Positions 1 through 28,390 of a DNA stretch of 64,000 nucleotides are shown piece after piece. This DNA is from Selaginella moellendorffii (lineage: Eukaryota > Plantae > Lycopodiophyta). Each line of letters starts with the position of its first letter. Within the stretch, counting starts at the first letter, position 1. The position numbers and the translations under genes were made by a program. The stretch is taken from positions 1,929,544 to 1,993,543 of the forward strand of contig NW_003314269.1 in NCBI RefSeq assembly GCF_000143415.4, read 5' to 3'. The notes below the pieces were generated by a model. The model saw only the letters and a list, made by a program, of their open reading frames with translations, was not told the DNA's origin and ran no database searches.

Positions 1-789
1 CATACAGATTGTTGACAAGGACTATCCAGTGGAATCGATCTGGCTCAGCGATACAAAGTCTAGCATTTCTGGTAAACTTTGGTAAGCTTTTCTCTCGCCT
101 TTGATTTAGTTCATCGTCTCACGGGTTTTCAACAGGAACTAGGAAGGAGAAAGCGGCCATGGAGGTGTTGCGACTTAGCAAAACACCTGTCCAGCATTGG
201 TCCGGTCCCTTTAAGCTTCCAGCACAGGGAGATGTCACTACTGGATTCGGCCTCCAACGTTTCTACAACGGAGTTTTCGCTGAAAAGTAAGAAGTTTTTG
301 TCCATGGACAGAAAAATCAAGATTGTTTTTACAGCTACTATCATCAAGGAATCGACTATGGTGCCGAAGAGGGGACTCCTGTCAAGGCACCCGCGAAGGG
401 TCGCGTGGTTCTTGTTGGTAAGGAAGCTGATGGTTTCCAGCTTCACGGGAACTGCATTGGCCTGGACCATGGTCATGGTGTAACTTCCATCTTAATGCAT
501 CTCTCATCGGTAGACGCCGTGTAAGCACGCTCTACACTTTCTTTTCTGTGCTGTGACATTCCTCACAGCTTCTTTTCCCTTGCAGTGAAGGAGAGATAGT
601 GAAACAAGGCGATACCATTGGCGCCGTGGGAGAATCCGGCCTCGCAACAGGACCACATTTGCATTGGTATGAAGCATGAAGGAACTATTTTTTCAAATCC
701 TCATCTCTTTTGCTGGAAACAGGGGCCTCCTTGTCAATGGGAAAGCCGTGGATCCCAACCAGTGGCTGGCAAAACAATGGTGGCTCTAA
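1..789 (+). CDS. Peptidase M23 (LytM-family Zn metalloendopeptidase), cyanobacterial type; 3' part only
   Basis: Manual splicing (introns 72-135, 287-334, 521-585, 667-722, all GT-AG) gives ...WSGPFKLPAQGDVTTGFGLQRFYNGVFAENYYHQGIDYGAEEGTPVKAPAKGRVVLVG...HGNCIGLDHGHGVTSILMHLSS...GLATGPHLHWGLLVNGKAVDPNQWL; stop 787-789. HxxxD and HxH zinc motifs are intact. Not in the ORF track. Confidence 0.93.
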
Positions 790-1619
790 TATACCATGGA
801 TTTTTGTTTTGGTTGTCAATCTTTCGCAATGAATTTTAGCTTGCAAGAGAAGTTATTATTTGTTGTATTTCTCCAGCATCACTGTGCCTCGCCCAAAACT
901 CCAATTTTTCTGCTTGAGTCTATGCCTCGGACAAAAACACCAGGATGGAGCAACAGGACGCGCTAGAGGCCGGATTATCAACGCGCTTTAGGAGTGTATG
1001 GTCACAACTCAAAGCTCGTCAGCTGAATCCTGTGCATCAGCAACACTGTGCTGTTCGTTGATGTCATTGACAATATCAAGGCTGCAGTGGAGAGCCAGTG
1101 TCACTCTTGCTCTTGGTCCATATTTGCTCAGTGTTTTAACTTTTCCTTTCTTCCTTTTGTTTAAGCTCTTCTTTTGAGCCAACTTCTTCCTAAAGGCCTC
1201 AAGTGTTCCTTGAATTTCTATTAAGATATTCCTTGATCTTTTAGATTCCTTGACTTTAGATCTCAATTCTAATGGTTTGTGAATGGTCTGCTATATAGTT
1301 ACAAGGCTTCTGGAATGCAGAGACAGCATCACCGCCACAAGCCTTTCTGCAAAAAATGGTGAGTTCGCTTACCTCTGGACTTCCTCTAAGTTCTCGTCAC
1401 GTGTACAGCACCACCAGTGCCAAGCGATGATCCTGATTCACATTGAAAGAGGTGGAGCTCATGGCCATCCCAGTGCCAACATCTGGTGTCTTGCAGCTCC
1501 TCTCAAAGTTCCAAGCCAAGGGACTGTCTGCCCAAGACCTGATAACAACATCTGTCGGCCACAACATTGGCCAGGCACATGAGGGGATGTGAAAATTGCT
1601 CCGAGGCAACTAATTAAGT

Positions 1620-4400
1620 GCCAAGACGAAAAATTCTGAATAACTACTTTTGTGAGGTGCAAGTGTGCTATCACAATGATATAATTTGGTATTGCTAATT
1701 ATTTTGTTAGTCTAAAATTAATTGAGAAATAAATCATCAAATGTGTACTTGGCTAGAAGATAAAATTTTTAAGTGCTATTAATCAAATATTATTGACTTC
1801 ATTTAAATAACTCATTTATTGTTTTCACTTTCTTGTTCCGGATAAACTCAATCACTCAATATCAACTTATGATAAATTATTATATTCATTAGCACATTTC
1901 CTCTGAGTTAGTTATACTGTAGTTATATTAGTTATTTATAAAAAGTGACTGGAATTGCCAATTATGCATATTTATGGAGTATATTCTGAAGACAAAAGTG
2001 TTATTTCTATATTTATTAACATTATTTTTTATTTAATAAAATTTCCAATTTATCTTAGAAATTATTATATAATTATTAAAATTCAAAGCCAAAATAAACT
2101 TTCATATTTGGGGTGTGTTGTGATATAAAGTTTTACATATATATTAAGGATACTGAGATTAAAAATATGATTAATTATTTAAAATATTGTGTCACTGTAT
2201 ATTTAAATTATAAACCCTAATTTTATACTCTGATTTGATTGTTGATTCAATTAATAAAAAAACACTACCTTCTTGATTTGATTTGAAATTAAAATACCAC
2301 TACATTTAAATTTTACCTTCATATTATACCAATTCTATAATACATTTGTATTAAATTTTATTTTACTTCAATTTAGACCCCAGTTAAAATGTTCTCAAAA
2401 TTAAAATTTAATATTTTTATTAAGTGACCCAAGTATTTAAAAAAAGGTTTGTTCCCTTTTGTATATATGTCTAATTTATATGATGACAGCTCAAATTCCA
2501 TGGCAACATGATGGAATTATTCAAAGAGTTGATGAATGAATTTTTTTCTGAAACTCCACCAACAAGATGTTTCATTAATTTATAAGGAGATGGTTATTTC
2601 AAAAGAGCAAATGTTACAAGCATTATCATTGTTTCATGTATGATAGATGATGCCAGAATAATTCCTTGACACTGTAAAATTTAAATTTTACTTTATAGTT
2701 AAATATAGTTAAAACTATGTGTGCTAAATTTCTTGTGCAAATCATAAATCAATGTAATTAAAAAAATTAAATATTTTTATTATGCTAAAGTATTTAGCTA
2801 ATATAAATTTAGGTAAAATTATATAATAAAGAGTTACTAAAAGATTACTAAGGTATTCATACATTTCATTGTTTTTATTAAATTCATAAAATTATTTAGG
2901 TTTTTCTATATATATATTTTATACATGAATTTAATGTTAATATATATTCATGAACAGATGGATGTATTTTTTTTAAAAATTATTCATTTTAATTTATCCT
3001 CTTTAGTGCAAAAGTTATTTTGTTTATATATTAATAAACTGTTTATTAGGCATGCTAAATGAAAATTTAGTGTTTTTTTATGAAAATAAAATACATAAAG
3101 TAGTTCTCTATACCAGTCTATTTTTTCATTTCATTCCCATACATAATTTATCAAATCAATCAAATTAATTTTGGAGGTGTTTTAGCATTGTATTTATTAT
3201 AATTTTAAAAAATAAACTATAAATTCTTTTTAGGATGATAGTAAATAGATTATCTATATAAATATAATATGGTTATTAAAATTAAATTAAATAAATTTAT
3301 CAAAATAATCTATATATATTTGAACTTATATATCTTCTTTTTAATGATATATGTAGTTTTGATCAATATTTAAATATAATGTTTTTAATAAACTCTACAT
3401 CACTAAATACATTTTGGAAACCTCTTGATGTTAATTGAGTAAAAATATAATGTTGCAATAAAAATTTACCATAAAACTATTTGCAAAATAAATTGTAAAT
3501 ATGACATGTTTTTTTTGTAAGTTTTCTTATGCTTTACATATTAGTTTTTTCTGTGACATCAGTTAAATATTGTAGCATTTTTTAATCGTATTTATAGTCT
3601 TCAATATATAAAATTATGGAATAATTTTCACTCTTTAAAATAATAATAAAATTTATTACTTCTATATTTTAATTTAATGATTGATCAATAATATACCTTA
3701 TCTTATTTTTGGATTAGTCTTCATCTCAATTTAATATTTATGTGCCTCTATGTATGTGGCTACTTTATAATTCTAGATATTTTTGAAAGTGTATTCTATT
3801 TATAAACTTTATTTTTTATTTAAACTTTTTTTCATGTATGATTCACTCTAAAATATATTTCTTCTCACCATGTTTATTTAAACAAAGGTCTAAGTTAAAT
3901 TTATATAAACACAGTTAATGTATAGTTTTATATCACTATAATTAAGATGATTCTTTTTAGCTACAAATAATCATATTTTGTATATTATTGTTTAATAGTA
4001 ATGATAATAGTATAAATTTTATATGATAAATGAAAGACCTTATAATTATATTTTCTTTATTATTTAAATCTTTGATAGTAGAAACGAAATAATGTTATTT
4101 GGCAATATAATTATTAATATAATTTCTTCTCAGAAGTTGAACTCATTATTCTCAAGGAGTTTATTTAAGTTATTCCTGTGTTATATATTTACCTTTGGTT
4201 TTCTATATACATAAATTATTAACTCGTTTCCATCGAAATATGAAATGAGAGTCAAATCTTCACATTGTGGCTTCTATTAGTCCATTAGTGAATTTGCTAA
4301 ACAATATCATAAAACAATCAAGATATAGAAACTTTAAAGGCAAAGTGGGTAAAGGTTTTTTTGCTGGATTTAAATGAGCTTCCATCGAGCAGCTATGGAA
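1620..4400. other. Very AT-rich, CpG-depleted non-coding tract (probable decayed TE DNA)
   Basis: No listed ORF starts or lies wholly within ~1680-4400; almost no CG dinucleotides, unlike the CpG-rich neighbouring genes. Confidence 0.55.
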
Positions 4401-4597: not shown

Positions 4598-5176
4598 TTA
4601 ACGACAATTTTTCTTCGTGGTTGCTCCTCCTTTGTTCTTAGGCGCAGCTGTACCATCAGATGAAGAAGACTTTTGTGTTTTCTGCTTTTTCCATTTGAAG
4701 ATTGCAGCCCTAAAATCATTCATCTTGGCAAGCGAGGTGAGAAAAGGGATGAGCTTGAGCAGCTCCTCATCTTCATCGTCACCATTCCCTTTGGAGAAGA
4801 AGGGCTTGATGGGCAATGCATTCTCCACATTCTGCTTGAACGTCTCGGGCTTGTCATCCACAACCACGACCCTCTTCATGTCCCGGCCTAGCAGAGCCGC
4901 TGGCTTGATCACAAAATCCACGCATGAATCGCCATACAACCGGTGTGCGATGCTTCCATACTTTCGATCAATCTCATCCACGATCTTCTCTGCACACTCT
5001 CGAGTTCCTGCTGTGAATAGCACAACTTCATACAAATCCTTGACAGCGTGGAGGAATTGATCGAGGCCGGGCCGTGAGACGCTTCCATCGATCAAAGTGT
5101 TGTCAAGATCGAGCACCAGAGTTGGGCGGCCAACCTGAGCGCCAACCTGTGGTGGCAACAAGTTCTCTTGACCCAT
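4598..5176 (-). CDS. Intronless CTD small phosphatase-like protein (FCP1/SCP, NIF domain, HAD fold)
   Basis: LVLDLDNTL (DxDxT), RPGLDQFL, YEVVLFTAG, LLGRDMKRVVVVDD, NALPIKPF, DEELLKLIPFL motifs. Confidence 0.88.
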   Translation of the reverse strand: MGQENLLPPQVGAQVGRPTLVLDLDNTLIDGSVSRPGLDQFLHAVKDLYEVVLFTAGTRECAEKIVDEIDRKYGSIAHRLYGDSCVDFVIKPAALLGRDMKRVVVVDDKPETFKQNVENALPIKPFFSKGNGDDEDEELLKLIPFLTSLAKMNDFRAAIFKWKKQKTQKSSSSDGTAAPKNKGGATTKKNCR

Positions 5177-5288: not shown

Positions 5289-8200
5289 TTAAAAGCTCTC
5301 CTTTCGAAACTCAAACCTGGTGCTGGTTCTCTGCGAGAAGGTCCAGGCGATTCCTTCCAGCTCCTTGGCTGCCGAGGCCATGCCGCAGTAGAACACGCCG
5401 ACACGGGCACCGGGATGGTTTGCGGCCAGCCTCGCGAAAACTTTGTTCCAGTTGGGCCGAGCAAAGTGCGTGCGAACCTGTTTCGCTCGACCGCGTTAGC
5501 ACCAGGCAGCTAGAAATTCAGAGCGAAAAGGAGAAAAGAGTTTGGCTATACCCGAGTTCCTGAGACAATGTCCACGCCACTCTTAGCGTGATGGAGGGCC
5601 TGGACGAGCGTTATCAGGGCCGAGCGAGCGTCTCCTTCCTCGTGAACGCACGTCAGATAGTTGTGCATTTCAATCACTGCCTGTGGATGCACAAGCATAG
5701 CTCAGGAAGACTTAGACAAAAAATTGTGTTGTACCTTGTGATCCATCTCGGCCACCTCGTTCATCACCCCCTTGAACCACTGGAAGGAGCCTTGTTCCTT
5801 GGTCACCCAGTAGAAGTAAGCGTGGCTTGGACAGCGTCGCGGGGACTGCTGGTACTCCGGCTTCCCCGTCTGAGTGTTGAGCATGTCCCTGAGAATGCTG
5901 ATAAACGGCGTTGCCCCGATTCCAAGTCCGACAAGGAGCATCACGTCGTATTTGCGGTAATCCTGCGCTGCAGCTCCGTAAGGTCCATCTATGTAAAGCT
6001 TTGGAAATCTGTTCATTCATTCAGTTTGATTGTGCCTTTTGGTTTTCTTTTGAGTAAATTTCACTCATTACCTTCTGAGTGCGCCTTCGTCACCACTGTC
6101 TTCTCCTTGTGCTTCGATCTCCTAATGTCTGTGGTAAGAACTCGAGCACAATCGAGAATCATTGTGCACCTTTGCGAATGTCCTCATGATCTCTTCCGTC
6201 CAGTCCCCCAAGCTGCGAACATGAACACTGAGGTGTTCATCTCCTGGTGCTGACGTGATTGAAAACGGGTGCCTACATCGCATACACGTAAACATTGTAT
6301 CCGAGAAGTTTCAAGGTCTTACCATTCGAATGGCGATATTGAGGGGCATTGAATAAAGATGTACATCCCACTCTGGTATTTAAAGCCGGGAGGTTTTGTC
6401 ATGTGAAGAGACAAAACATTTCCGGGAAAAATGGCAGCCTAGAAAACAAACGAGTTCATTGATCTGGTAAGTTACAAAAATTTAGTATAATTACCTGTAC
6501 AATGTCAACCTTGTAAACGCATGCTCTAGATACTCTCAAAAACCGTTCTCCAATGTAAAGAACTGTTGGAACAAGAATGTACAACCACGTCTATGGAGAA
6601 AAAAACATTAGTATATAGACAAATACTGACACACATACCGTTTTCTCTGACCATTTGTGCGTGAGGAAAAGTAATGTCGAGTGAACAATCAAGAGAGCGT
6701 AGACAATGGCGAATAGATGGTGAGAATACCAGAACACGTTGAACCCGGTAAGTTTGTCAAAGGGTCGGCGGAGCTTGAGCCTGTTCTTCCTGGCGAGGTT
6801 GGTCGCAAGAAGAAACGACACCGCCATCAATATAACCATCGCGATCCCTGTCACGCCTTCGACGGACATGACCATGCCCAGCATAGAAGGCTGGCAGCCG
6901 TGAAAGTCTCTTCCCAAAGTACGCATGAAAGTCTTCGACTCTGCATTGGCAATCCGGGGGAAGTCACAGGTCAAATGAGCTCCTCCGTGAATAAGCACTC
7001 CCAAACAAATAGCTCCTGCCACTGTCTGTGTATGAAAACAGTAAACAAAGAAGCTTACAGAAAAAAAGAAATGGACTTTTTTACCTTGTGAAAGCTGATG
7101 CTGTCATCGAAGGGAATCACTGAGCCGAGCCTGGTAGAGCGGAGCCACGTTATAGTGTTTCTACAAACAGGGAAAAGGATGAGTGCCATGTTGAGCTTGA
7201 GTGTCTCGGCAGCACCTTTGGCCATGCTCACGCAATACCCCATCACTTCAAAGCCGGACCGGTAGCTGTACTGCATGGACTTCCACATAAACAGCACGGC
7301 CATGGCTCCAAACCACACGCCAACAATCCAGAGTCGACGCCAATCCTCTTGGAAAGCATTCTTGGTGCTGCAAGCAAGGAACTGTAGCCTCCCCAGCCTT
7401 TCGGCGTTACACGGGTGATGGCTCTGGTAGTGCTGCCGGAACGAATCAGCCTCAAAGGCGCGCTTGCTTAATAAGCTCTCGAGCTGTGATATCTGTGATG
7501 AAGATGATCGAGTCGAGTTTGAGTAAAGAATGTAATCGAAGACGAAAAAGAAAAACTTACGCCAACTTCGCCTTTCTTCTCACGATCCAGTTCTTCCATC
7601 AACAATGCCGCGTACTCCTCCGCCTGCTCGTCGAGAATCGAGAGTCGGTTGGCCGACGCGCTCAGAAGGATGGCCTGAGAGTGATCAACCATAAGCTTTC
7701 TTATAGTCTGGAGAAAATAAGAAACTAGCTCGAACGTACACTTTTTAGCTCCGACCCACTGATCTTTCCATCCCGGTCTCGATCGCATCTGCGAAGCACA
7801 CGACCGATCGATCACAGGGCATTTCTAGAAAGAAATCCTTACAGATCGAAGAAGATTTGCATCCTCGAGGCGGTCGTCTTATCTGTGAGATCCATCCAGA
7901 GATCCCAGAGCTCATCCTTGCCAATGTCGTGACGATCCTCGACGGCGCTGGTGGTGACGCCCCGGGAGTGCGCTCTCCGGCGCCGCAAAACGCCCAGGAG
8001 CTCCGCGGCAAACTCCTCGCTCTCCGGCATCCCTGCATTGCGATCAAAGAAACCTAATACTCCACAAGAACCAAGAAAATCGTCCTCTAAATACCAATGC
8101 ACGCGCCAAATCGGCCAGGCGGGAGCTTTCCATCGCTGCTCGAGAGCTTCTCGAATCGCTCCATCACTCTGTGCCACACCGCCTCGTCCCCAGCGCTCGC

Positions 8201-8593
8201 CGTGCGCTTATCGATAAAGCGGAGGCCCTCCAGCGCGCTATTCACATTGTTCCTGGCAGCACTGGCATCCTCGTCCTCCACCACCGGCATTACGCGAGCA
8301 TTGCTCCTAGCCATGGCGCTGCCGGAGCTCTCGCTATCGATCACAAGCTCGACAAATCCCGGCTGATCCACCAGCGGCTGTTCGTGCGATCCCTCGAAAG
8401 ATTTTGCCGCCACTTCCTGCTCGTCCGCGCGAGGAATTTCCCCAGGAACACTGCCGCTGCCGCTCGAAATCTCATCCTTCCCGGCCGGCATTTGCGAATC
8501 GCGAGCGCCGGATTGAGAATTCCGCACCCCCTGCGTGAAGATCGATCCTTGTAGAAAGCCTGGAATGGGGATTTCTTGCGCGCTTTCATGCAT
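5289..8593 (-). CDS. RBOH: Respiratory burst oxidase homolog (NADPH oxidase), multi-exon, apparently complete
   Basis: [21 protein letters not shown]-terminal region; EF-hand region ([22 protein letters not shown]); [23 protein letters not shown]; FWYSHHL; [12 protein letters not shown]; [16 protein letters not shown]; C-terminus [10 protein letters not shown]...FEFRKESF*. Start codon is approximate. Confidence 0.95.
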
Positions 8594-9519
8594 TGCACTG
8601 CAAGGCAGGCGGCAGAGAACTGCGCGCCACCAAACACCAAGATTCCAGAGCGCCGATCGATCGAAGGCGAGAAGAAAAGGAGTGCCTTTTGATCCAATCT
8701 AACAGCGCGCTGGAAGGAACTGACGATCGATCGCGACGGCATACGAACATTTGGGCCTGGCAGAAGAGGAGTACACACACAAAGGAGAGGAGGGAAGCGT
8801 TTCTATTTACATTTAAAACCGGTGGGTGGAAATAGGTAGTGATCGATCTTCAAAGCAATGAAATATCGATCGATCCATCGCTCCATCGCCTGCCCCGTGT
8901 TGGTAGTTCTCTCCCTTTATATCCTTTCTTTCTTCTCATCTTCTTCGCTCTTCTTTAATGTCGGAGAGTTTAAGTTCTTCCTGGAAGGAAGAATTAGCAG
9001 CCATTGGACAGACTTTGGTGCCATTGGAGCCTAGGGTTCTTGGGCGATGCCCACTGATGCCCAGGTATTCGCTGATCTCCTCAAATTGTGTGCCCAATCG
9101 AAGGATCTCAGCACTGGCAAGCAAATTCACCAGAGGATCATTCACAGCCGCCTTGATCGCAATCGCTACCTTTGCAATCTTCTCATCGATATGTATGGGA
9201 AATGCGGAAGCATCCAAGGCGCGAGATTGGTGTTCCAAGCAATTGACAAGCCCAATCCTTTTACCTGGAACATTGTCATAGCTGCAAATGCCGCGAATGG
9301 GCATTTGGAAGAGGCCCGTAGCCTCTTCGATCGAATGCCCAAAAGAAACTCCGTGTCGTGGAACACGATTATCTCCGCTTACGCCCAGCACGGCAGATTA
9401 GACGATGCCTGCCATCTCTTCGCCCAGATCCCCGATGAGCAGCGCGACGAGATATCCTGGAACGCAATCGTCCAGGCTTGTGCTCTAAACGGGCGCTTGG
9501 ATCGAGCGCAGGAGCTATT
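7199..9519. repeat. Segmental duplication copy A (RBOH 5' half + divergent promoter + PPR 5' end)
   Basis: Near-identical to 17396-19711 in direct orientation. Confidence 0.95.
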
Positions 9520-13798: not shown

Positions 13799-14599
13799 AA
13801 ACTCAGGAGCTTACACCCGTTACGCTAAGGCCACGCCCAATCACCTTTGCCACACTGGTAGTCCAATACCACTTGCATCGCAGTCTTGGCTCTCCAAGAC
13901 TAGGCAAACCATCCGTGAGTGGTCATCTCAGATCCACTCCTTAGCATCCTTAGGATGCCTACAGACATGGGGAATAGCCTTCCCCAATATCTCTGTTTCG
14001 GTCCCCACCAAGTCCCTTTCTGTCCTTGGCTGTGTTCGCCAATACTGCCACTGGATCAAGGCCCACCGGCCCGACCACTAAGTCCCACTATCCTCTAGGA
14101 CTTCCTCACTGTGTGACTGTGTCCTTGGTCACTACATTAGAGGCCTACTCCTCTTCCCTTTCACCGTTTGGGACTTTGGGACACCATTTCGGAACACCGT
14201 GGCCTTACGCAAGCCTCATGGGTACTCTCCCCGCTTTTCGCCTTTAAGTGCTCTAGCCATGGGCTTAGAGCGAGGTTCCGTTGAGCCACAACAGGTATCC
14301 AAGTAGGTAGTGCCACCCACACTTGGACTGGGAGCATCGGCCAGTCGATCTCCCGGGGGAACTAGAGCCGGTTCTTGAACACTTCACCAAGCTACCCCGC
14401 TTGTCGGCTTGTGTTCACTCTAGTCTTGGACTTCCCAGTGGGCAGCTCATCACCCAACACTGGGTCCGGCCTTCCTGGGCCAAACTGGCCTTTCCTGGCC
14501 AAACTGGCTCCACTGTAGTCCTCCCCCTACTATACTTTTGGAGCTCACCAAACCCCCCAGGGTCTGGGAGACGAACGCTTTGGGCTTTCACCCTCTCAG

Positions 14600-15163
14600 G
14601 CTCGAACTCGGACTCGGCCTCGGACTCGGACTCGGACTCGGACTCGGACTCGGATTCGGACTCGGACTCGGATTCGGACTCGGACTCGGACTCGGCCTTG
14701 GCCTCGGTCTCGGTCTCGGTCCCGATCTCGGTCTCGGTCTCGGTCCCGGTCTCGGTCTTGGTCCCGGTCTCGACTTCGGACTCCATCTCGGGTCCATCTC
14801 AGACTCCATCTCGGGTCCACCTCGGGTCCATCTCGGACTCCATCTCGGGTCCACCTCGGGTCCATCTCGGACTCCATCTCGGGCTCCACCTCGGGTCCAT
14901 CTCGGACTCCATCTCGGGCTCCACCTCGGACTCCATCTCGGACTCCATCTCGGGTCCATCTCGGGTCCATCTCGGGTCCATCTCAAACTTCATCTCGGAC
15001 TCCATCTCGGGTCCATCTCGGACTCCATCTCGGACTCCATATCGGACTCCACTTTGGGTCCATCTCGGACTCCATATCGGACTCCACTTCGGGTCCATCT
15101 CGGACTCCACTTCGGGTACATCTCGGACTCCAACTCGGGTCCGCCTCGGACTCCATCTCGGAC
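14600..15163. repeat. Compound tandem repeat: (GGACTC)n, then (GGTCTC)n, then 11/12-mers GGACTCCATCTC / GGGTCCATCTC
   Basis: Read directly; it produces the low-complexity ORFs in all six frames. Confidence 0.93.
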
Positions 15164-17395
15164 ACTTCCATGTGTCATGTGTTGGTCCTTTTTATGTCCC
15201 TTTTTGAAGCCTCGCTTATTGCTCTCTTTGTGCTTGTTCCTCGAGCACTTCGTTGGGAGTTCCACTCCCGCTCTCAACCTTTCAAGGCGGAGCTTTTAGT
15301 CCAAACGTGTTACGCTCGTTTGGCTTTCGCTTCGGCCACTACTATGTGGCGCCCTTCCGGCTCCACTTTGGGGCCTAGGGATTTTGTGTCTCACATAATG
15401 ATGGTTGGTCTGGTTGATTTGTTTTCACTTTCCTTTTGAAACTGCAGGAATAGACATGGAAGCTGAAACCACCCCCAAAGCCTGAAGTAGCAAAAAGAGA
15501 GCCAAAACCAGGGATTGATCTTGGTAGTGACAAAGAGATTGCAGAAGAGCAAGTTCACACGTCCAAGAAAATGGTGACTGGCAATCTTTTTATAGATTTT
15601 TCTGCTAATGGGATATTATGCAGATTGTTGTAAGGGACAAAGATTGGTGGTGCAGTAGCATTTAGTGACCGAGATGCCATGGTTATTACTTCAAATTACA
15701 TGTCCAAAATTTGCAGTTTTTGCTTTGCTTTCGTGAGACAGCCAGGATTGTGAACTTGGTGTTGCTGAATAACACATGGTGATAAATTTATTCATTTATA
15801 TGTGGTGTATGTGTTTCTTTTGAATGTAGATGACATTAAGCACAAGCTTTATCACTTTTATGGTTTTGAGCTATTCCACCATGAATTAGAAGAACACTTG
15901 CCAAGTACAGGATGTCCTAGCTCTAAAAGCTTTTTGCATGGCTCTTTCGAGTTAGTCCCATGCTTAAACATGTGCATTTATCTATCTATTACTTTCTTCT
16001 CTTGTTTTGGTAGAAAGCTTAGTTTTTTTGTGTGGTTTCTTTCTTGCCAGGATTAGAAGGATAAAACATTGTAGCTCAAAATCTGAGAATGCTGGTTTTA
16101 ATGCCATTGCATTAACAAGAACCAATTATATATAGTTTTAAAGAACTAAACTTAGCACTTGTATGTTTTTATTTTTATTTAATGTGTATTATGTCAAAAT
16201 TTACTTGCTTATCTCTTTATATTATGACCAATCTGGATTTATATTTTCAGAATTATATAATTTAAATATATATGGGAAAAAAGAGAATTTATATCAGGGT
16301 TCTTTTGTAAAAGATGCACATCAAATCTAAGAGAAAATTCTATATTTGCTGAACATATTTGAAGAGCTGAATTACTCATATGGGACAAGATAAGCATGAT
16401 AACCATTCATGCTTTGTGTGACCTCAAGAATTGTGGCACGGATTTTAGTGGTATCACATTTGGTGATAGGGGGAGACTTTAGGCAAACCTTACCTGTTCT
16501 TAAAAGAACTTGCCACACACAAATCATTTGAAATAGTGTTAAATCCTCACCAAGATGGTCTAAAATTCTAAAGTTCTCATTGCCTATAAACATGCAAGTG
16601 AACCCAGAAGAAAAGGAATGGTCAAGATGGCTTGTGACCCAAGGAAATGGCAATCTCCCTAACCTCCTAAGATTTAATCAGGACATTTAGAGCACCATTA
16701 ACATCCACTACTGGAGAACAATTGATAGAGACAAGCAACTTAAGCCTACTTTGAAAGGCTATTCTCACAACTTAAATGACCTCTCTTTACAAGTAAATGA
16801 CTAAATCCTTTCAAGAATGAGAAACAATAACAAACAAGAGCATTGATACTTTAGAAAGAGAATCAAATGAGAAGATGCTTGATTATCCTCTTAAACTTGG
16901 TAACACCGTCTGGAATGCCTTCACATAAGCTAAACATAAAAATCAGCTGTATCATAATGCTCTTACATAATATTAACACAAATAAACTATCATAACCAAA
17001 GCTTTATTGAAGTTAAAATTTTACATAATGATATGTAAGTAAGAAAAAAATTCTACCAATAATCTCTTTGAAACCAAAAAAATGGAGATATGCCAATCAT
17101 TGTTAAATGGTAGTAGTTCTCTATAAGACATTCATTTTCTATTACAATTTGCAAATCCTAAAGACAAACACTGTAAAATATAAAGATATTATTGCCAAGA
17201 CAAGTTTTCAACCATGGTCAACTTTATAACGCACTCTTTTAAGGGGAACATCAAAGACACAAATGTCTGTAGAACAATATGAGGGACAAGGTTTTCTTCA
17301 AAATAAAATAGTGTACACAAAAAACATAGTCTATAAAGAAATTATTTAAAATGATAATATAAAAAAACATAATTAGCTAGTCTTTCTTATACTTA

Positions 17396-18792
17396 GAGTG
17401 TCTCGGCAGAATCTTTGGCCATGCTCACGCAATACCCCATCACTTCAAAGCCGGACCGGTAGCTGTACTGCATGGACTTCCACATAAACAGCGCGGCCAT
17501 GGCTCCAAACCACACGCCAACAATCCAGAGTCGACGCCAATCCTCTTGGAAAGCATTCTTGGTGCTGCAAGCAAGGAACTGTAGCCTCCCCAGCCTTTCC
17601 ACGTTACACGGGTGATGGCTCTGGTAGTGCTGCCGGAACGAATCAGCCTCAAAGGTGCGCTTGCCTAACAAGCTCTCGAGCTGTGATATCTGTGATGAAG
17701 ATGGTCAAGTGGAGTTTGAGTAAAGAATGTAATCGAAGACGAGAAAGAAAAACTTACGCCAACTTCGCCTTTCTTCTCACGATCCAGTTCTTCCATCAAC
17801 AATGCCGCGTACTCCTCCGCCTGCTCGCCGAGAATCGAGAGTTGGTTGGCCGACGCGCTCAGAAGGATGGCCTGAGAGTGATCAACCATAAGCTTTCTTA
17901 TAGTCTGGAGAAAATAAGAAACTAGCTCGAACATTGCGATCAAAGAAACCTAATACTCCACAAGAACCAAGAAAATCGTCCTCTAAATACCAATGCACGC
18001 GCCAAATCGGCCAGGCGGGAGCTTTCCATCGCTGCTCGAGAGCTTCTCGAATCGCTCCATCACTCTGTGCCACACCGCCTCGTCCCCAGCGCTCGCCGTG
18101 CGCTTGTCGATGAAGCGGAGGCCCTCCAGCGCGCTATTCACATTGTTCCTGGCATACTTGCATTCGAACGGGTACGATTAATAAAAAACGCCGTTTAAAA
18201 CGCGCGTATAATACGGCGTTTAAAACGGCGTTTAAACACCAAGAATATTTTTAAAAACCCTAAAGAATATGCTTTCTTTTACTTAGGATTAGGGTTCATG
18301 TAAAATCAGGGTTCGAAAAAAACTGTAAAATTAGGGTTCGAAAAAAACTGAAAACCATTATACCCGTTCGAAAAAAAGCTAAACGGGTATTAAACGTTCG
18401 ATACCCGTTCGAATCCGGTTGCGTTCGAATGTTCGGATGCAAGTATGGTTCCTGGCAGCACTGGCATCCTCGTCCTCCACCACCGGCATTACGCGAGCAT
18501 TGCTCCTAGCCATGGCGCTGCCGGAGCTCTCGCTATCGATCACAAGCTCGACAAATCCCGGCTGATCCACCAGTTGCTGTTCGTGCGATCCCTCGAAATA
18601 TTTTGCCGCCTCTTCCTGCTCGTCCGCGCGAGGAATTTCCCCAGGAACACTGCCGCTGCCGCTCGAAATCTCATCCTTCCCGGCCGGCATTTGCGAATCG
18701 CGAGCGCCGGATCGAGAATTCCGCAACCCCTGCGTGAAGATCGAGCCTTGCAGAAAGCCTGGAATGGGGATTTCTTGCGCGCTTTCATGCAT
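17396..18792 (-). pseudogene. RBOH 5' fragment pseudogene
   Basis: Truncated at AETL. Lacks the sequence equivalent to 7736-8036 (EF-hand exons; junction cgaac|attgcg at ~17932). Exon 1 is disrupted by a MITE. Confidence 0.9.
18153..18447. mobile_element. hAT-superfamily MITE (295 bp)
   Basis: 17-bp TIRs CATACTTGCAT(T/C)CGAAC; 8-bp TSD GTTCCTGG (18145-18152, 18448-18455); empty site present in copy A at ~8249-8256; subterminal TTCGAA and TACCCGTTCG repeats. Confidence 0.93.
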
Positions 18793-19238
18793 TGCACTGC
18801 AAGGCAGGCGGCAGAGAACTGCGCGCCACCAAACACCAAGATTCCAGAGCGCCGATCGATCGAAGGCGAGAAGAAAAGGAGTGCCTTTTGATCCAATCTA
18901 ACAGCGCGCTGGAAGGAACTGACGATCGATCGCGACGGCATACGAACATTTGGGCTTGGCAGAAGAGGAGTACACACACAAAGGAGAGGAGGGAAGCGTT
19001 TCTATTTGCATTTAAAACCGGTGGGTGGTAGTGATCGATCTTCAAAGCAATGAAATATCGATCGATCCATCGCTCCATCGCCTGCCCCGTGTTGGTAGTT
19101 CTCTCCCTTTATATCCTTTCTTTCTTCTCATCTTCTTCGCTCTTCTTTAATGTGGGAGAGTTTAAGTTCTTCCTGGAAGGAAGAATTAGCAGCCATTGGA
19201 CAGACTTTGGTGCCATTGGAGCTTAGGGTTCTTGGGCG

Positions 19239-21215
19239 ATGCCCACTGATGCCCAGATATTCGCTGATCTCCTCAAATTGTGTGCTCAATCGAAGGATCT
19301 CAGCACTGGCAAGCAAATTCACCAGAGGATCATTCACAGCCGCCTCGATCGCAATCGCTACCTTTGCAATCTTCTCATCGATATGTATGGGAAATGCGGA
19401 AGCATCCAAGGCGCGAGATTGGTTTTCCAAGAAATCGATAGGCCCAATCCTTTTACCTGGAACATTGTCATATCTGCAAATGCCGCGAATGGGCATTTGG
19501 AAGAGGCCCGTAGCCTCTTCGATCGAATGCCCAAAAGAAACTCCGTGTCGTGGAACACGATTATCTCCGCTTACGCCCAGCACGGCAGATTAGACGATGC
19601 CTGCCATCTCTTCGCCCAGATCCCCGATCAGCAGCGCGACGAGATATCCTGGAACGCAATTGTCCAGGCTTGTGCTCTAAACGGGCGCTTGGATCGAGCG
19701 CAGGAGCTATTCGATCGAATGCCGCAGCACAGCGTGATCTCCTCCACCGCGCTTGTCGCGGCGTACGCGAGGAGCGGAGAACTCTCCCGGGCGAGAGCGA
19801 TCTTCGATCAAATGCCGGATCGCGATGCTGTCTCCTGGATCGCGATGGCGAGCGCTTACGCCCAGATCGGCAATCTCATCGAGGTCAAGAGCCTGTTCGA
19901 TCGATCACAGACTCTCCATCGATCCTCACAGAATGCGCTCGTCCTGGAATCCTGGAATGCCCTTCTCGTGGCATATGCCCGGAATGGGCATCTGGCATAT
20001 GCCAAGCAAGTGTTCGATGAGATTCCCTACAGGGACATCGTGACGTGGAACTCGATGCTCCAAGCGTTCGCGGAGGCCGGCCATGTGGAAAGCGCGCGGG
20101 AGATATTCCTCTCCATGCCCGAGAGAGACGTGGTTTCTTCCACCGCGGCGATGGTGGCGGTAGGGCAAGAGAGTGCGCGGGAGATCTTCGCTGAGATGCC
20201 CCAGAAGAATCTCATCAGCTGGAACACGATCGTGACGATCCACTCGCGGAATGGCGATGTGATCGGCGCCAGGAGCCTGTTCGATCGCATGCCCGAGCAC
20301 GATCTCGTGTCGTGGAACACTATGATCGCGGCGTATTGCCAGTCGGGGCGAATGGAGGACGCGCGATCGCTGCTAGAATCGATGCCCGTCTGGGATCCAG
20401 TGTCGTGGATCTTGATGATCTCCGGCTATGGCGAATTTGGCGATGTGATCCAGGCCAAGCACGCGTTTGGTTTGATCCCAGACCGGGACAGCGTCGCTTG
20501 GAGCGCGATTATCTCTGCGTATGCTCGAAATGGGCATTCCAGAGAGGCGCTGGCGCTGTTTTGCCGGATGGATCTGGAGGGCATCCCGCCCGAGCAATCC
20601 AGCCTCGCCAGCGCCATCGATGCTTGCGCGGCCCTCTCATCGCTCGCGCTGGGCAAGATCATTCACTCCATGGCGATCGATGCCGGATTTGCCTGGGATG
20701 TGATCGTGGCGAGCGCGCTTGTGGATCTCTATGGCAAATGCGGGCGGTGGGAGACGGCCATGGCGATCTTCGAGAAGATGCCGCGGAAGAACACGGTTTC
20801 CTGGAGTGCTGTTCTCGCCGCCAGAGCCAGGAGCGGGGCTGGCGGCACCGCGGCGGCGGTGGAGATCTTTGGGCGAATGGCGCTGGAGGGATTCGGCGCC
20901 GATCCAATCGCGTTCATGACCGCGCTCTACGCGTGTAGCCATGGCGGATTGCTGGACAAGGGATTGAGCCTCTTCGCATCGCTGAGCAGCGATTTTGGGA
21001 TGGATCCGTGGGGGGCGCACTACGTGTGTGTGATCGATCTCCTCGCCCGGTCGGGGCAGCTTGGGAGATCCGAGGAGCTTATCGCGAGCATGCCATTCGA
21101 ACCTGGGATTGTGGCGTGGTCGTCGCTGCTCGGGGCGAGCAATCTCCAGGCGGATGTATGGAGAGGGCGTCGCGCTGCCGAGGAAGTCTCGAAGCGCTCC
21201 TCTCAAGAACCCTAA
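19239..21215 (+). CDS. PLS-class pentatricopeptide repeat protein, partial E domain, no DYW
   Basis: Intronless 658 aa; ~31-aa repeats (VSWN.MI.AY...G....A..LF..MP); C-terminal ACSHGGL...HYVCVIDLLARSG...MPFEP..VAWSSLL. Confidence 0.93.
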   Translation: MPTDAQIFADLLKLCAQSKDLSTGKQIHQRIIHSRLDRNRYLCNLLIDMYGKCGSIQGARLVFQEIDRPNPFTWNIVISANAANGHLEEARSLFDRMPKRNSVSWNTIISAYAQHGRLDDACHLFAQIPDQQRDEISWNAIVQACALNGRLDRAQELFDRMPQHSVISSTALVAAYARSGELSRARAIFDQMPDRDAVSWIAMASAYAQIGNLIEVKSLFDRSQTLHRSSQNALVLESWNALLVAYARNGHLAYAKQVFDEIPYRDIVTWNSMLQAFAEAGHVESAREIFLSMPERDVVSSTAAMVAVGQESAREIFAEMPQKNLISWNTIVTIHSRNGDVIGARSLFDRMPEHDLVSWNTMIAAYCQSGRMEDARSLLESMPVWDPVSWILMISGYGEFGDVIQAKHAFGLIPDRDSVAWSAIISAYARNGHSREALALFCRMDLEGIPPEQSSLASAIDACAALSSLALGKIIHSMAIDAGFAWDVIVASALVDLYGKCGRWETAMAIFEKMPRKNTVSWSAVLAARARSGAGGTAAAVEIFGRMALEGFGADPIAFMTALYACSHGGLLDKGLSLFASLSSDFGMDPWGAHYVCVIDLLARSGQLGRSEELIASMPFEPGIVAWSSLLGASNLQADVWRGRRAAEEVSKRSSQEP

Positions 21216-21258: not shown

Positions 21259-23580
21259 ATGCTCGCAACTCGATCGGGCATTTCCGAGGCGGCGATCTAT
21301 GCGCAGCTCATCCGCAGCTGTGGATCCGAGAGGAATCTCGACCGCGCGAGGCAGATCCATGCCCGGATCATCGCCGCCGATTACCCGCTGGATCGCTACC
21401 TGAACAATCTGCTCGTGGAGATGTATGGCAAATGCGGTGGCGTGGAGGACGCGCGCCGCGTCTTCGATGCCATTCGCGATCCCAACCAGTTCTCCTGGAA
21501 TCTCATGCTCTCCGCGTGGATCCATGCCCGCAGCGGCGGCGGCCTCCACCGCGCGCGATCGTTCTTCGATGAAATGCCGCAGCGTGACACCGTATCGTGG
21601 AACGAGATGATCACGGCATATTCCCAAGCCGGGCACCTACACGAAGTCAGGGCTCTCTTTCGCGATATGCCCAATCCTGACCTAATCTCGTGGAATACGC
21701 TCCTTTCAGCAAATGCCCAAAAGGGGTTTCTGGAAGACTCTAAGCAACTCTTTAGAGATATGCCTTGCCATGACATGGTATCATGGAACTGTCTAATCTC
21801 CTGCTTTGCACAAGATGGAGATTTGGACAAAGCTCGAGCTTTGTTTCACAAGATGCCCCAATGGGACATAATTACGTGGAATACACTTATTTCGATTTAT
21901 GCCCAAGCCGGGCATCACAGGGAGTGCAAAGACTTGTTTGAGACGATGCCACGCCGGAACGTGGTGACGTGGACGGCCGTCCTTGCCGTACATGTCCAAA
22001 ACGGCCAGGTCGTCGAGGCCCGACGGACGTACGACCGGATGCCCGAGTGGGACGTTGTGTCGTGCTCGGCTATGGTGACGGCATATGCCCAAGCCGGGCA
22101 TTTGGAAGAGGCCAGCGAGATCTTTAGAGGAATGAAGCAGCGCAACACGGTGGCGTGGACGTCGCTCCTGGCGGCATACGCGCAGGCCGGGAACTTCCAG
22201 CGCGCGAAAGCATTGTTTGCGGAGATGCCGGAGAAGACAGTTTCGGCCTGGAACTCGATGATCACGGGCTACGGCCTCCACGGGCACTTGAGCGAGGCGC
22301 GCCGGCTCTTCCTCGAGGCCCCCGCGAGGGACACGGTCACCTGGAACGCGATGATCCAGGCGTGCATTGATAATCTTCGCTTCCAGGACGCCAAGGGCCT
22401 GTTCGATCAGATGCCCCACCACGACGTCCTCTCCTGGAACTCGATGATGGTGGGATTCTCGCAGCTCGGGGAGCTCCGCGAGGCGGAGCGTCTCTTCCGA
22501 TCCATCCCGGAGAGGAATGTGGTTTCTTGGAACACGATGATCGCCACTTACGCGCAGCATGGATTCGTCCGCGAGGCCGCGGAGCTCTTCGATCGCATCC
22601 CCCGCCGCGACATCGTCACCTGGAACGCGATCATCTCCGGGTTTGGTCAAAACGGGCTCGCGGAGGAAGCCAAGGCGGCGTTCGAGCAAATGCCCGAGAG
22701 GAACATGGTCTCCTGGACGGCCGCGATCGCGGCGCTGTCCCAGAACGGACGGCTGGATGAGGCCCGGGACCTGTTTGAAAGAATGCCGCGCCGCGACGTG
22801 GTGGCGTGGAGCGCTATAATCGCCGCGAACGCCCAGAACGGCCGTGGGTGGCAGGCGATACACCTCTTCCGCCTCATGGACCTCGACGGCGTTCGCCCGG
22901 ACATCAGTACATACGCCAGCGTTCTCGACGCGTGCGCGGGCGTTGGATCGCTGGGCCTGGGCCGCCTCGCGCACGCCGACGCCGTCCACGCGGGCGTCCA
23001 CGTCGACGTCGTTGTGGCGGGCGCGCTGGTCAACATGTACGGCAAGTGCGGCCAGCTCGGCGCCGCGCGGCGGCTCTTCGACGCGCAGCAGGTACGGAAC
23101 GCGGTGACATGGACCGCCATGGTGGCGGCATATGCCCAGAACGGCCATGGCGCCCAGGCACTTGAGCTCTTCCACGTCATGAACGCCGAGGGCGTGGGCG
23201 CCTGCTCGGTTGTCTTCGTCAGCATCCTCTCCGCGTGTAGCCACCTGGGACTGGTCCGCCAGGCACGGGACTACGTCCACTCCATCACCCGCGACCACGG
23301 GATGGCGGTGACGTGGGACCACTACCACTGTATGATCGACGTCTTTGGACGGGCAGGATGGCTCCTCGAGGCCGAGGAGCTCATCACGAGCATGCCCTTC
23401 TTGCCCGGGGACGTTGCATGGACGACGCTGCTATCGGCGTGTAAGCTCCACGGTGACAAGCACCGAGGTAACCGAGCCGCGGACGTGGTGATCGAGCAAG
23501 AGGACTCGGACCAAGTCGGCTCGGCTTTCATGCTCTTGAGAAACGTTGTAACGGATCCTCAAATTGTCTTTCAAAGTTAA
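21259..23580 (+). CDS. PLS-class PPR protein (E-type, no DYW)
   Basis: Intronless 773 aa PPR array ending ACSHLGL..HYHCMIDVFGRAG..MPFLPGDVAWTTLL. Confidence 0.93.
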   Translation: MLATRSGISEAAIYAQLIRSCGSERNLDRARQIHARIIAADYPLDRYLNNLLVEMYGKCGGVEDARRVFDAIRDPNQFSWNLMLSAWIHARSGGGLHRARSFFDEMPQRDTVSWNEMITAYSQAGHLHEVRALFRDMPNPDLISWNTLLSANAQKGFLEDSKQLFRDMPCHDMVSWNCLISCFAQDGDLDKARALFHKMPQWDIITWNTLISIYAQAGHHRECKDLFETMPRRNVVTWTAVLAVHVQNGQVVEARRTYDRMPEWDVVSCSAMVTAYAQAGHLEEASEIFRGMKQRNTVAWTSLLAAYAQAGNFQRAKALFAEMPEKTVSAWNSMITGYGLHGHLSEARRLFLEAPARDTVTWNAMIQACIDNLRFQDAKGLFDQMPHHDVLSWNSMMVGFSQLGELREAERLFRSIPERNVVSWNTMIATYAQHGFVREAAELFDRIPRRDIVTWNAIISGFGQNGLAEEAKAAFEQMPERNMVSWTAAIAALSQNGRLDEARDLFERMPRRDVVAWSAIIAANAQNGRGWQAIHLFRLMDLDGVRPDISTYASVLDACAGVGSLGLGRLAHADAVHAGVHVDVVVAGALVNMYGKCGQLGAARRLFDAQQVRNAVTWTAMVAAYAQNGHGAQALELFHVMNAEGVGACSVVFVSILSACSHLGLVRQARDYVHSITRDHGMAVTWDHYHCMIDVFGRAGWLLEAEELITSMPFLPGDVAWTTLLSACKLHGDKHRGNRAADVVIEQEDSDQVGSAFMLLRNVVTDPQIVFQS

Positions 23581-28347: not shown

Positions 28348-28390
28348 CTAGAAAATACTTCACGGGTATGCCACTTTGCATTCGAAGGTA

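What the first reader, a model, noticed from the sequence alone, without database searches (positions are those of the whole stretch)
1..789. Cryptic cyanobacterial-type M23 peptidoglycan endopeptidase in a plant nuclear genome
Seen: five short exons, invisible in the ORF track, encode a LytM domain with intact Zn ligands (HQGID, HLH). Established: M23 enzymes cleave peptidoglycan cross-links, and non-seed-plant chloroplasts such as those of moss retain a peptidoglycan pathway used in division. Inference: an endosymbiont-derived plastid wall hydrolase. The introns show it is not bacterial contamination. The degradative side of plastid peptidoglycan is poorly characterised.
Basis: partly seen in the sequence, partly recalled or inferred. 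Interest (0 to 1): 0.7.

Follow-up and report, generated by a model that had tools for sequence, protein, structure and literature searches.

The report
Cyanobacterial-type M23 peptidase gene, Selaginella
The window opens inside a real, expressed Selaginella nuclear gene for a zinc peptidase inherited from the cyanobacterial ancestor of chloroplasts, which probably cuts the thin bacterial-type wall that chloroplasts of non-flowering plants still carry; the gene is already annotated but unstudied, and belongs to a different family from the DipM wall hydrolase already tested in moss.

Summary
Observation confirmed. Window 1-789 (+) holds the last five of seven exons of Selaginella moellendorffii LOC9632066 (RefSeq XP_024527768.1, 318 aa; older model SELMODRAFT_408308). 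Stranded RNA-seq shows all four GT..AG introns at the predicted positions. Two exons separately hit Pfam Peptidase_M23, and all five catalytic residues (H211, D215, H263, H294, H296) are intact and invariant in 62 relatives.

Interpretation partly supported. The gene is not cryptic, because it is already annotated as an uncharacterised protein. Its nearest non-plant relatives are cyanobacterial periplasmic M23 proteins. Orthologues occur in prasinophytes, streptophyte algae, mosses, lycophytes, ferns and conifers. No angiosperm appeared in three searches, which matches the lineages reported to keep a full peptidoglycan gene set.

It is not DipM, the LysM+LytM hydrolase already shown to act in moss chloroplast division. 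It has no LysM domain and scores 21-41 bits against a 740-bit DipM cutoff. Its whole-length fold matches Campylobacter Pgp3, a DD-endopeptidase and DD-carboxypeptidase (pLDDT 91, TM 0.84).

Plastid targeting is not shown: the 35-residue N-terminus is acidic and unlike a transit peptide. The scan noted a similar 7-exon M23 gene on another piece of this genome (s1-431285), probably the second allele. Modest interest: a new member of a known kind.

The parts
1..71 (+). 3' part of exon 3 of 7 (P0392 residues 135-157 plus first base of G158); end of the N-terminal beta domain
   Evidence: Translation of 2-70 is an exact substring of P0392; junction 71|136 in RNA reads; upstream exons located in L001 6001-6519
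72..135 (+). Intron, 64 nt, GT..AG
   Evidence: 11 and 14 junction reads in two stranded RNA runs, plus transcript contig X1
72..81 (+). Extension of exon 3 when an alternative donor (81|82) is used; shifts the frame and gives a stop two codons into the next exon
   Evidence: 10 of 21 (X21) and 4 of 18 (X22) reads across this intron use it; frame read from sequence
136..286 (+). Exon 4 (residues 158-208): linker helix and the strand leading into the M23 core
   Evidence: Exact substring of P0392; weak NCBIfam Pgp3 hit at profile 119-162; RNA junctions
287..334 (+). Intron, 48 nt, GT..AG
   Evidence: 19 and 8 junction reads plus contig
335..520 (+). Exon 5 (residues 208-270): first half of the Peptidase_M23 domain
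   Evidence: Pfam PF01551 E=1.4e-13, profile 2-55
342..356 (+). HxxxD motif (H211 and D215, zinc ligands)
   Evidence: Invariant in 62 aligned family members
498..500 (+). Catalytic His H263
   Evidence: Invariant column
521..585 (+). Intron, 65 nt, GT..AG
   Evidence: 11 and 4 junction reads plus contig
586..666 (+). Exon 6 (residues 270-297): second half of the M23 domain
   Evidence: Pfam PF01551 E=7.8e-7, profile 59-84
656..664 (+). HxH motif (H294 catalytic, H296 zinc ligand)
   Evidence: Invariant columns
667..722 (+). Intron, 56 nt, GT..AG
   Evidence: 13 and 5 junction reads plus contig
723..789 (+). Exon 7 coding part (residues 297-318) with stop TAA at 787-789
   Evidence: Exact substring of P0392
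790..870 (+). Short 3' UTR; read depth fades between 805 and 871
   Evidence: Depth table; transcript contig X1 ends at 802

Best explanation
Shown: window 1-789 is the 3' two-thirds of Selaginella moellendorffii gene LOC9632066. It is a spliced, expressed nuclear gene for a 318-aa, two-domain M23 zinc metallopeptidase. The protein has an N-terminal beta domain and a LytM catalytic domain, the same whole-length architecture as Campylobacter Pgp3 and Pseudomonas 2HSI. All five catalytic and zinc-binding residues are intact. The gene belongs to a green-lineage orthogroup whose sister group is a family of cyanobacterial M23 proteins carrying Sec signal peptides. This fits one transfer from the plastid ancestor to the nucleus. 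Inferred: the enzyme works in the plastid envelope intermembrane space. There it would act as a DD-endopeptidase, possibly also a DD-carboxypeptidase, cutting D-Ala-mDAP cross-links of the thin plastid peptidoglycan so that the sacculus can expand or split as the plastid grows and divides. It would act alongside, and is not the same as, the LysM-bearing DipM.
For: Gene and splicing. M23 domain and motifs. Identity with S. moellendorffii scaffold GL377573.1 (0 mismatches in 6789 nt) and with XP_024527768.1. Fold: AlphaFold model with pLDDT 91. Best Foldseek hits are Pgp3 6JMY (TM by target 0.84, 274 columns) and 2HSI. By sequence, 2HSI scores 2.9e-30 over residues 91-310 and Pgp3 1.3e-27. NCBIfam's best match is Pgp3. 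Pgp3 is a DD-endopeptidase and DD-carboxypeptidase (PMC6978369). Cyanobacterial affinity: every named non-eukaryotic hit in three word-index searches is cyanobacterial. At least 70 of the 77 strongest loci among 185,579 species genomes are cyanobacterial by title and the rest are untitled uncultured MAGs. The first loci titled as other phyla come at ranks 78 and 81, with E-values of 1e-46 and 2e-42 against 1e-72 to 3e-53 for the first 77. In the tree, non-cyanobacterial outgroups split off at SH-aLRT 99 and the cyanobacteria form a clade at 99. A tree with all 31 eukaryotic rows held as one clade has a better likelihood than the free tree (AU p=0.76). Cyanobacterial members carry signal peptides, so they are periplasmic. 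Their genes often lie near a YkuD L,D-transpeptidase (28 of 76 loci) or DAP epimerase (10 of 76). Distribution: Physcomitrium, Ceratodon, Sphagnum, Diphasiastrum, Psilotum, Cryptomeria, Klebsormidium, Chara, Mesostigma, Chlorokybus, Chloropicon, Pycnococcus and Pyramimonas, with no angiosperm. Full Mur gene sets are reported for Selaginella, Physcomitrium, Klebsormidium, a cupressaceous conifer and Chloropicon (PMC12681378, PMC10784329). Moss peptidoglycan is of the mDAP type (PMC9434261).
Against: No localisation evidence was obtained. The Selaginella N-terminus before the conserved domain is only 35 residues, with 7 acidic residues and 6% Ser+Thr, and an in-frame stop lies 6 codons upstream of the ATG. 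Orthologues have N-terminal extensions of 35-226 residues that are not obviously transit-peptide-like. No enzymatic data exist for any plant or cyanobacterial member. The score against the Pgp3 model is 123 bits with a 300-bit cutoff, so substrate specificity is extrapolated from a distant relative. The eukaryotes are sister to the cyanobacteria and not nested within them, and no glaucophyte or red-algal member was seen. MacLeod et al. report full peptidoglycan gene sets in two angiosperms (PMC10784329), where I found no orthologue.
Confidence: 0.6

Rival explanations
1. It is the Selaginella orthologue of DipM, the LysM+LytM septal peptidoglycan hydrolase of cyanobacteria, Cyanophora and moss described in 2014.
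For: PMC4015805 reports a DipM homologue in S. moellendorffii known only from an EST (GI:169112254). That EST could not be retrieved here. DipM is also a cyanobacterial-type M23 and also lacks a predicted transit peptide.
Against: No LysM domain was found at E<=1 in the Selaginella protein or E<=0.01-1 in 18 relatives, including the moss, conifer, Klebsormidium and cyanobacterial members. NCBIfam DipM models score 21-55 bits against cutoffs of 740 and 900, and only over the M23 domain. P. patens shows one member of this family, without the DipM1/DipM2 paralogue pair and without a DipM name in its cluster.
Confidence: 0.06
2. It is a catalytically active M23 peptidase of cyanobacterial origin that no longer works on plastid peptidoglycan, for example a cytosolic or otherwise-targeted peptidase with a new substrate, or a defence enzyme against bacterial walls.
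For: The N-terminus is unlike a transit peptide, and no signal peptide is present in Selaginella or its orthologues. No localisation data exist. Some chlorophytes with the gene (Myrmecia, Pyramimonas) were not checked for the peptidoglycan pathway.
Against: The gene is lost in angiosperms but kept in conifers, ferns, lycophytes, bryophytes and streptophyte algae, which parallels the reported full Mur gene sets (PMC12681378). Moss DipM1 also has no predicted targeting signal, yet it is processed and sits on the chloroplast surface. All catalytic residues and the Pgp3-like substrate-side domain are strictly conserved.
Confidence: 0.25
3. It is a non-catalytic LytM factor that activates an amidase, like EnvC, NlpD or ActS.
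For: Weak NCBIfam hits to ActS, EnvC and NlpD over the M23 domain. Foldseek aligns the LytM domain to EnvC.
Against: Activator LytM domains have degenerate active sites. Here H211, D215, H263, H294 and H296 are invariant in 62 sequences. PMC4015805 Table S1 lists no AmiA for P. patens or S. moellendorffii.
Confidence: 0.05
4. It is bacterial contamination or a dead relic.
For: None beyond the bacterial-looking domain.
Against: There are four spliced introns. Strand-specific expression is seen in two runs from one study, and 16 further probable-RNA runs from other studies hold about a third of the sampled words. The gene lies on a 3.67-Mb plant scaffold between plant genes (Phi_1, NIF, NADPH oxidase). 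A second expressed allele exists. The family is conserved across Viridiplantae.
Confidence: 0.01

Closest known systems
Campylobacter jejuni Pgp3 (PDB 6JMX/6JMY) and Pseudomonas aeruginosa putative M23 peptidase 2HSI
   Same: Same whole-length two-domain architecture, an N-terminal beta domain plus a LytM domain. Foldseek gives TM 0.84 over 274 columns. Sequence E-values are 1e-27 to 3e-30, and the alignment covers the N-terminal domain too. The HxxxD, H and HxH residues are intact.
   Different: Only 24-27% identity and 123 bits against a 300-bit NCBIfam cutoff. This protein is eukaryotic, nuclear and intron-bearing, and has no signal peptide. Its activity is untested. Pgp3 shapes a helical bacterium, whereas this protein would act on a plastid wall.
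DipM of Synechococcus elongatus, Cyanophora paradoxa and Physcomitrium patens (PMC4015805)
   Same: A nucleus-encoded M23/LytM protein of cyanobacterial ancestry in plants that retain peptidoglycan. It has no predicted transit peptide. It is the precedent for a plastid-wall hydrolase acting in chloroplast division.
   Different: DipM is defined by LysM repeats plus LytM, and this family has no LysM. It fails both NCBIfam DipM models. DipM was reported absent from green algae and seed plants, whereas this family is present in chlorophytes and conifers.
Cyanobacterial ~280-330-aa 'M23 family metallopeptidase' (e.g. Geitlerinema PCC 7407, Planktothrix, Microcoleus, Nostoc)
   Same: 38-49% identity over about 73-97% of the length. 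Same two domains and same invariant residues. It is the sister group in the tree.
   Different: These proteins have Sec signal peptides, no introns and an operon-like context: a ComFB-domain gene lies downstream in 55 of 76 loci and a YkuD gene nearby in 28 of 76. I found no characterised member. Anabaena LytM factor Alr3353 is 760 aa, so it is a different protein.
MepM / ShyA / Csd3-type DD-endopeptidases
   Same: The M23 catalytic domain and the expected chemistry, cleavage of the D-Ala-mDAP cross-link.
   Different: Their N-terminal domains differ, and only the LytM domain aligns (TM by target 0.31-0.37).

Membership tests
Peptidase family M23 (Pfam PF01551, LytM domain) | Profile match above the curated gathering score | tested here: met
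   Full protein P0392 scores 98.4 bits against a 28.7-bit cutoff. Exon 335-520 alone scores 51.3 bits and exon 586-666 scores 29.7 bits.
Peptidase family M23 (Pfam PF01551, LytM domain) | Zinc ligands HxxxD and the second His of HxH, plus two catalytic His residues | tested here: met
   H211, D215, H263, H294 and H296 are present in the window (342-356, 498-500, 656-664) and invariant in 62 sequences.
Peptidase family M23 (Pfam PF01551, LytM domain) | LytM beta-sheet core fold | tested here: met
   AlphaFold model with pLDDT 91. Foldseek probability is 1.00 to LytM, lysostaphin, EnvC, ShyA and Pgp3.
Pgp3 / 2HSI-type two-domain M23 peptidases | Colinear match of the N-terminal domain as well as the LytM domain | tested here: met
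   phmmer aligns residues 91-310 to 2HSI and 113-314 to 6JMX. Foldseek gives TM by target 0.77-0.84 over 272-280 columns.
Pgp3 / 2HSI-type two-domain M23 peptidases | NCBIfam NF052530 (Pgp3) curated cutoff of 300 bits | tested here: not met
   110-124 bits for the Selaginella, moss, conifer and cyanobacterial members. They are relatives, not equivalogs.
Pgp3 / 2HSI-type two-domain M23 peptidases | DD-endopeptidase and DD-carboxypeptidase activity on mDAP-type muropeptides | not testable with these tools
   Needs an enzyme assay. The activity is known for Pgp3 only (PMC6978369).
DipM (LysM + LytM septal hydrolase; PMC4015805) | One or more LysM peptidoglycan-binding repeats N-terminal to LytM | tested here: not met
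   No LysM hit in P0173 (identical to P0392 except 8 residues at the exon 3/4 junction) or in 18 relatives, at E<=0.01 or E<=1.
DipM (LysM + LytM septal hydrolase; PMC4015805) | NCBIfam DipM equivalog scores (NF041208 cutoff 740; NF050804 cutoff 900) | tested here: not met
   21-41 bits and 39-55 bits, over the M23 domain only.
DipM (LysM + LytM septal hydrolase; PMC4015805) | Chloroplast-division defect on knockout and localisation to the envelope surface | not testable with these tools
   Experimental.
Degenerate LytM factors (EnvC / NlpD / ActS amidase activators) | Loss of zinc-binding and catalytic residues | tested here: not met
   All five residues are intact and invariant.
Endosymbiont-derived nuclear gene for a plastid protein | Cyanobacteria are the closest prokaryotic relatives | tested here: met
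   (ranking). (outgroup split at 99, cyanobacterial clade at 99). (eukaryote monophyly not rejected, AU p=0.76).
Endosymbiont-derived nuclear gene for a plastid protein | N-terminal plastid targeting signal | tested here: inconclusive
   Only a crude composition test was possible: 35 aa, 7 acidic residues and 6% Ser+Thr in Selaginella. Orthologues carry extensions of 35-226 aa of varied make-up. The bacterial signal peptide is lost. No targeting predictor was available. Intermembrane-space proteins such as moss DipM1 can lack canonical signals.
Endosymbiont-derived nuclear gene for a plastid protein | Co-occurrence with the plastid peptidoglycan synthesis pathway | tested here: inconclusive
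   The taxa that hold the gene overlap those reported with full Mur sets (PMC12681378, PMC10784329), and no angiosperm was found. I did not search for Mur or PBP genes myself. Two angiosperms said to keep the full set showed no orthologue.

The most novel reading that the evidence does not exclude
A second wall-cutting enzyme, independent of DipM, has been part of the plastid peptidoglycan machinery since the origin of the green lineage. It is a Pgp3-type DD-endopeptidase without LysM. It was retained in every green group that keeps a plastid wall, including conifers, and was lost with the wall in angiosperms. It would be the 'space-maker' that lets the plastid sacculus grow or split, a role still unassigned in plastids.
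Probability: 0.45. Interest if true: 0.55.

Novelty: new member of a known kind. Interest (0 to 1): 0.42.

Why it matters
Plastid peptidoglycan is now accepted in mosses, lycophytes, ferns, streptophyte algae and probably conifers. Its turnover enzymes, however, are known only from DipM, MltB and VanY homologues in moss. In bacteria a cross-link-cutting DD-endopeptidase is needed to insert new wall material, and none has been assigned in plastids. This orthogroup is a concrete candidate that can be tested by knockout in Physcomitrium (XP_024380799). Its presence or absence could also serve as a marker for lineages that still build a plastid wall. The gene itself is ordinary in that it is already annotated, and the general idea has a published precedent.

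Tried and rejected
1. Exons 1-71, 136-286 and 723-789 alone gave no Pfam hit, so only exons 335-520 and 586-666 carry detectable signal on their own.
2. The look-up of encoding contigs had no record for the RefSeq protein P0392. The older model P0173 gave the locus.
3. The transcript contig X1 stops about 28 nt short of the annotated ATG, so it says nothing about an upstream exon or a longer N-terminus.
4. I could not retrieve the DipM sequences of the 2014 paper (GI:567757316, 168028139, 168061355, 168053993, EST 169112254). Non-identity with DipM therefore rests on domain content, NCBIfam scores and cluster names. A rough mapping of UniProt accession order to GI numbers was judged too shaky to use.
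5. Utsunomiya et al. 2021 is not held. Its content is known here only through citing papers.
6. No paper in the library mentions the gene identifiers or links ComFB with M23 in cyanobacteria.
7. Alr3353 was considered as the cyanobacterial counterpart and rejected on length, 760 aa.
8. Contamination, pseudogene and amidase-activator readings were rejected as set out under the rival explanations.

Full report
**What is in the sequence.**
Reading window 1-900 in three frames shows five coding pieces on the + strand: 1-71, 136-286, 335-520, 586-666 and 723-789. They are separated by GT..AG introns of 64, 48, 65 and 56 nt, and the phases fit. I searched the pieces one by one, by reference.
- Exon 335-520 hits Pfam Peptidase_M23 at 1.4e-13 (profile 2-55).
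- Exon 586-666 hits it at 7.8e-7 (profile 59-84).
- The other three pieces give nothing on their own. NCBIfam gives only sub-threshold hits to several M23 peptidoglycan enzymes, with Pgp3 the strongest over exons 136-286 and 335-520.
A further catalytic His lies at 498-500.

**Expression and splicing.**
Sixteen small runs that look like RNA, and four of unknown kind, hold part of the stretch.
- Laying two stranded RNA-seq runs and one assembled transcript contig on 1-2000 gave exactly the four predicted junctions. All are on the strand expected for a + strand mRNA, and coverage ends at about 805-870.
- About half (X21) to a quarter (X22) of the reads across the first intron use a donor 10 nt further downstream (81|82). 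This shifts the frame and stops two codons into the next exon.
- An A>C difference at 634 (Glu to Asp) in part of the reads matches the second allele of the gene (P0393).

**Identity of the gene.**
An exhaustive profile search with exon 335-520 found a tight group of relatives at 54-81% identity. Among them were Chara, Mesostigma, Chloropicon, Myrmecia, Pyramimonas and a Microcoleus M23 protein.
- A word-index search with one of these relatives returned Selaginella moellendorffii SELMODRAFT_408308, which matches the window almost perfectly.
- The locus fetched for that protein contains the window with 0 mismatches in 6789 nt. Window base 1 is L001:6520 on scaffold GL377573.1 of GCA_000143415.2.
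- The same 90% cluster holds RefSeq XP_024527768.1 (LOC9632066, 318 aa, P0392). It also holds a second allele or copy on another scaffold: LOC9656179, with the older model SELMODRAFT_402560.
- Every exon translation from the window is an exact substring of P0392, and the four split codons give its residues 158, 208, 270 and 297.
- I did not build or submit a joined model myself. I used the database protein, which is identical to the spliced product.
- The gene has seven exons. Exons 1 and 2 and the start of exon 3 lie upstream of the window, and an in-frame stop sits six codons before the annotated ATG.
- The gene is therefore real but not cryptic. It is annotated as hypothetical or uncharacterised, and the older GenBank model mis-splices the first junction seen here.

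**Which family.**
None of 19 family members has a LysM domain. The set includes the Selaginella, moss, Diphasiastrum, Cryptomeria, Klebsormidium, Pycnococcus and cyanobacterial proteins.
- NCBIfam ranks Pgp3 first: 110-124 bits against a 300-bit cutoff, with the alignment reaching into the N-terminal domain.
- The two DipM equivalogs reach only 21-55 bits against cutoffs of 740 and 900.
- Against solved structures, the best sequence matches are Pseudomonas 2HSI (2.9e-30, residues 91-310) and Campylobacter Pgp3 (1.3e-27).
- An AlphaFold model built on a 62-sequence alignment is confident (pLDDT 91, pTM 0.86).
- Its best Foldseek hits are the Pgp3 structures (TM by target 0.78-0.84 over about 275 columns) and 2HSI. 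Other M23 proteins align only over the LytM domain.
- H211, D215, H263, H294 and H296 are invariant in all 62 sequences.
- Pgp3 is a DD-endopeptidase and DD-carboxypeptidase (PMC6978369).

**Ancestry.**
With the Selaginella, streptophyte-alga or conifer protein as query, green-lineage proteins come first. After them, every named hit is cyanobacterial, at 38-49% identity over most of the length.
- A pattern scan of one genome per prokaryotic species kept 80 loci. At least 70 of the first 77 are cyanobacterial by title, and the others are untitled uncultured MAGs. The first loci titled as other phyla, a Chlorobium MAG at rank 78 and a Deferrisomatales MAG at rank 81, have E-values of 1e-46 and 2e-42, against 1e-72 to 3e-53 for the first 77.
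- A 95-row maximum-likelihood tree separates a mixed bacterial outgroup (SH-aLRT 99). It recovers the cyanobacteria as a clade (99) and Chara plus land plants as a clade (96).
- The free quick search left the green algae as an unsupported grade. A tree with all 31 eukaryotic rows held together has a higher likelihood, with AU p=0.76. One origin is compatible with the data.
- The eukaryotes are sister to the cyanobacteria and not nested inside them, so the direction of transfer is inferred from biology.

**Distribution.**
Named orthologues come from these groups:
- Mosses: Physcomitrium (XP_024380799, A9SYC0), Ceratodon and Sphagnum.
- Lycophyte: Diphasiastrum.
- Fern ally: Psilotum.
- Conifer: Cryptomeria.
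- Streptophyte algae: Klebsormidium, Chara, Mesotaenium, Chlorokybus and Mesostigma.
- Chlorophytes: Chloropicon, Pycnococcus, Pyramimonas, Myrmecia and a JGI 'Pico_ML_1' alga.

No angiosperm protein appeared, even with the conifer protein as query. Published surveys report full Mur gene sets in prasinophytes, Klebsormidium, Marchantia, Physcomitrium, Selaginella, conifers and Chloropicon, and generally not in angiosperms (PMC12681378, PMC10784329). The match is good. It rests on literature for the synthesis genes, and two angiosperms claimed to keep the full set showed no orthologue.

**Targeting.**
Cyanobacterial members begin with classic signal peptides, so they are periplasmic. The eukaryotic members have lost these and carry N-terminal extensions of 35-226 residues with varied composition. 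In Selaginella the extension is 35 residues with 7 acidic residues and 6% Ser+Thr, which is unlike a stromal transit peptide. This does not decide the matter. Peptidoglycan lies in the intermembrane space, and moss DipM1, which also lacks any predicted signal, is processed and decorates the chloroplast surface (PMC4015805). Targeting remains the weakest link.

**Relation to what is known.**
PMC4015805 showed that DipM (LysM+LytM, of cyanobacterial origin) hydrolyses peptidoglycan. It also showed that a dipM1 dipM2 double knockout gives fewer, larger chloroplasts in moss, and it listed a Selaginella EST as a DipM homologue. That paper reports DipM as absent from green algae and seed plants.
- The present family has no LysM. 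It occurs in chlorophytes and conifers, and it has a single moss member without a DipM label.
- It is therefore a second M23 lineage that the 2014 survey did not describe. I could not fetch the paper's sequences to prove non-identity directly.
- No held paper mentions the gene identifiers. The reviews of plastid peptidoglycan that I checked do not list an M23 enzyme.
- The Anabaena LytM factor Alr3353 is 760 aa, so it is a different protein.

**Context in cyanobacteria.**
A ComFB-domain gene follows the M23 gene on the same strand in 55 of 76 loci. A YkuD L,D-transpeptidase gene lies nearby in 28 loci and DAP epimerase in 10. The last two fit a role in wall remodelling.

**Verdict.**
- It is wrong about the gene being hidden, too strong on novelty, and unproven on plastid targeting.
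- The most likely function is a DD-endopeptidase acting on plastid peptidoglycan, working beside DipM.
- This is a new, unstudied member of a known kind of system and a reasonable knockout target in moss.

Noticed in passing
window 72-81 (donor at 81|82): An alternative 5' splice site 10 nt downstream of the main donor is used in about half (X21) to a quarter (X22) of junction reads. It shifts the frame and truncates the protein before the M23 domain. The old GenBank model of the other allele (EFJ38549.1, 461 aa) follows this donor and then reads on into downstream sequence.
   Followed up: partly
window 634: An A>C difference in 7 of 22 RNA reads (Glu to Asp) equals the residue in the second allele or copy LOC9656179 (P0393). 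Both copies therefore appear to be expressed, or their reads cross-map.
   Followed up: partly
window ~1600-4400: A block of about 2.8 kb with only 12-30% G+C lies just downstream of the gene, between it and a NIF-domain phosphatase gene (4598-5176, - strand). Its nature was not examined.
   Followed up: no
window 7196-9519 and 17392-19711: A direct duplication of about 2.3 kb at ~97.5% identity, 10.2 kb apart. It includes the 5' end of a PPR gene. Intact PPR ORFs follow at 19239-21215, 21259-23580 and 28376-30592.
   Followed up: partly
window 14323-15300: Low-complexity repeat tract whose ORFs read as runs of DS, GL or RP dipeptides in different frames.
   Followed up: no
L002-L077 (cyanobacterial loci), e.g. 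L023:3459-4010: In 55 of 76 cyanobacterial loci a ComFB-domain gene lies directly downstream of the M23 gene on the same strand. A YkuD L,D-transpeptidase gene is nearby in 28 loci. No paper in the library links ComFB and M23.
   Followed up: partly
P0003 (Chara braunii GBG75882.1, 918 aa): The Chara model joins a reverse-transcriptase fragment (RVT_1, residues 391-459) to the M23 orthologue (residues ~734-918). This is probably a gene-model fusion with a retroelement.
   Followed up: no
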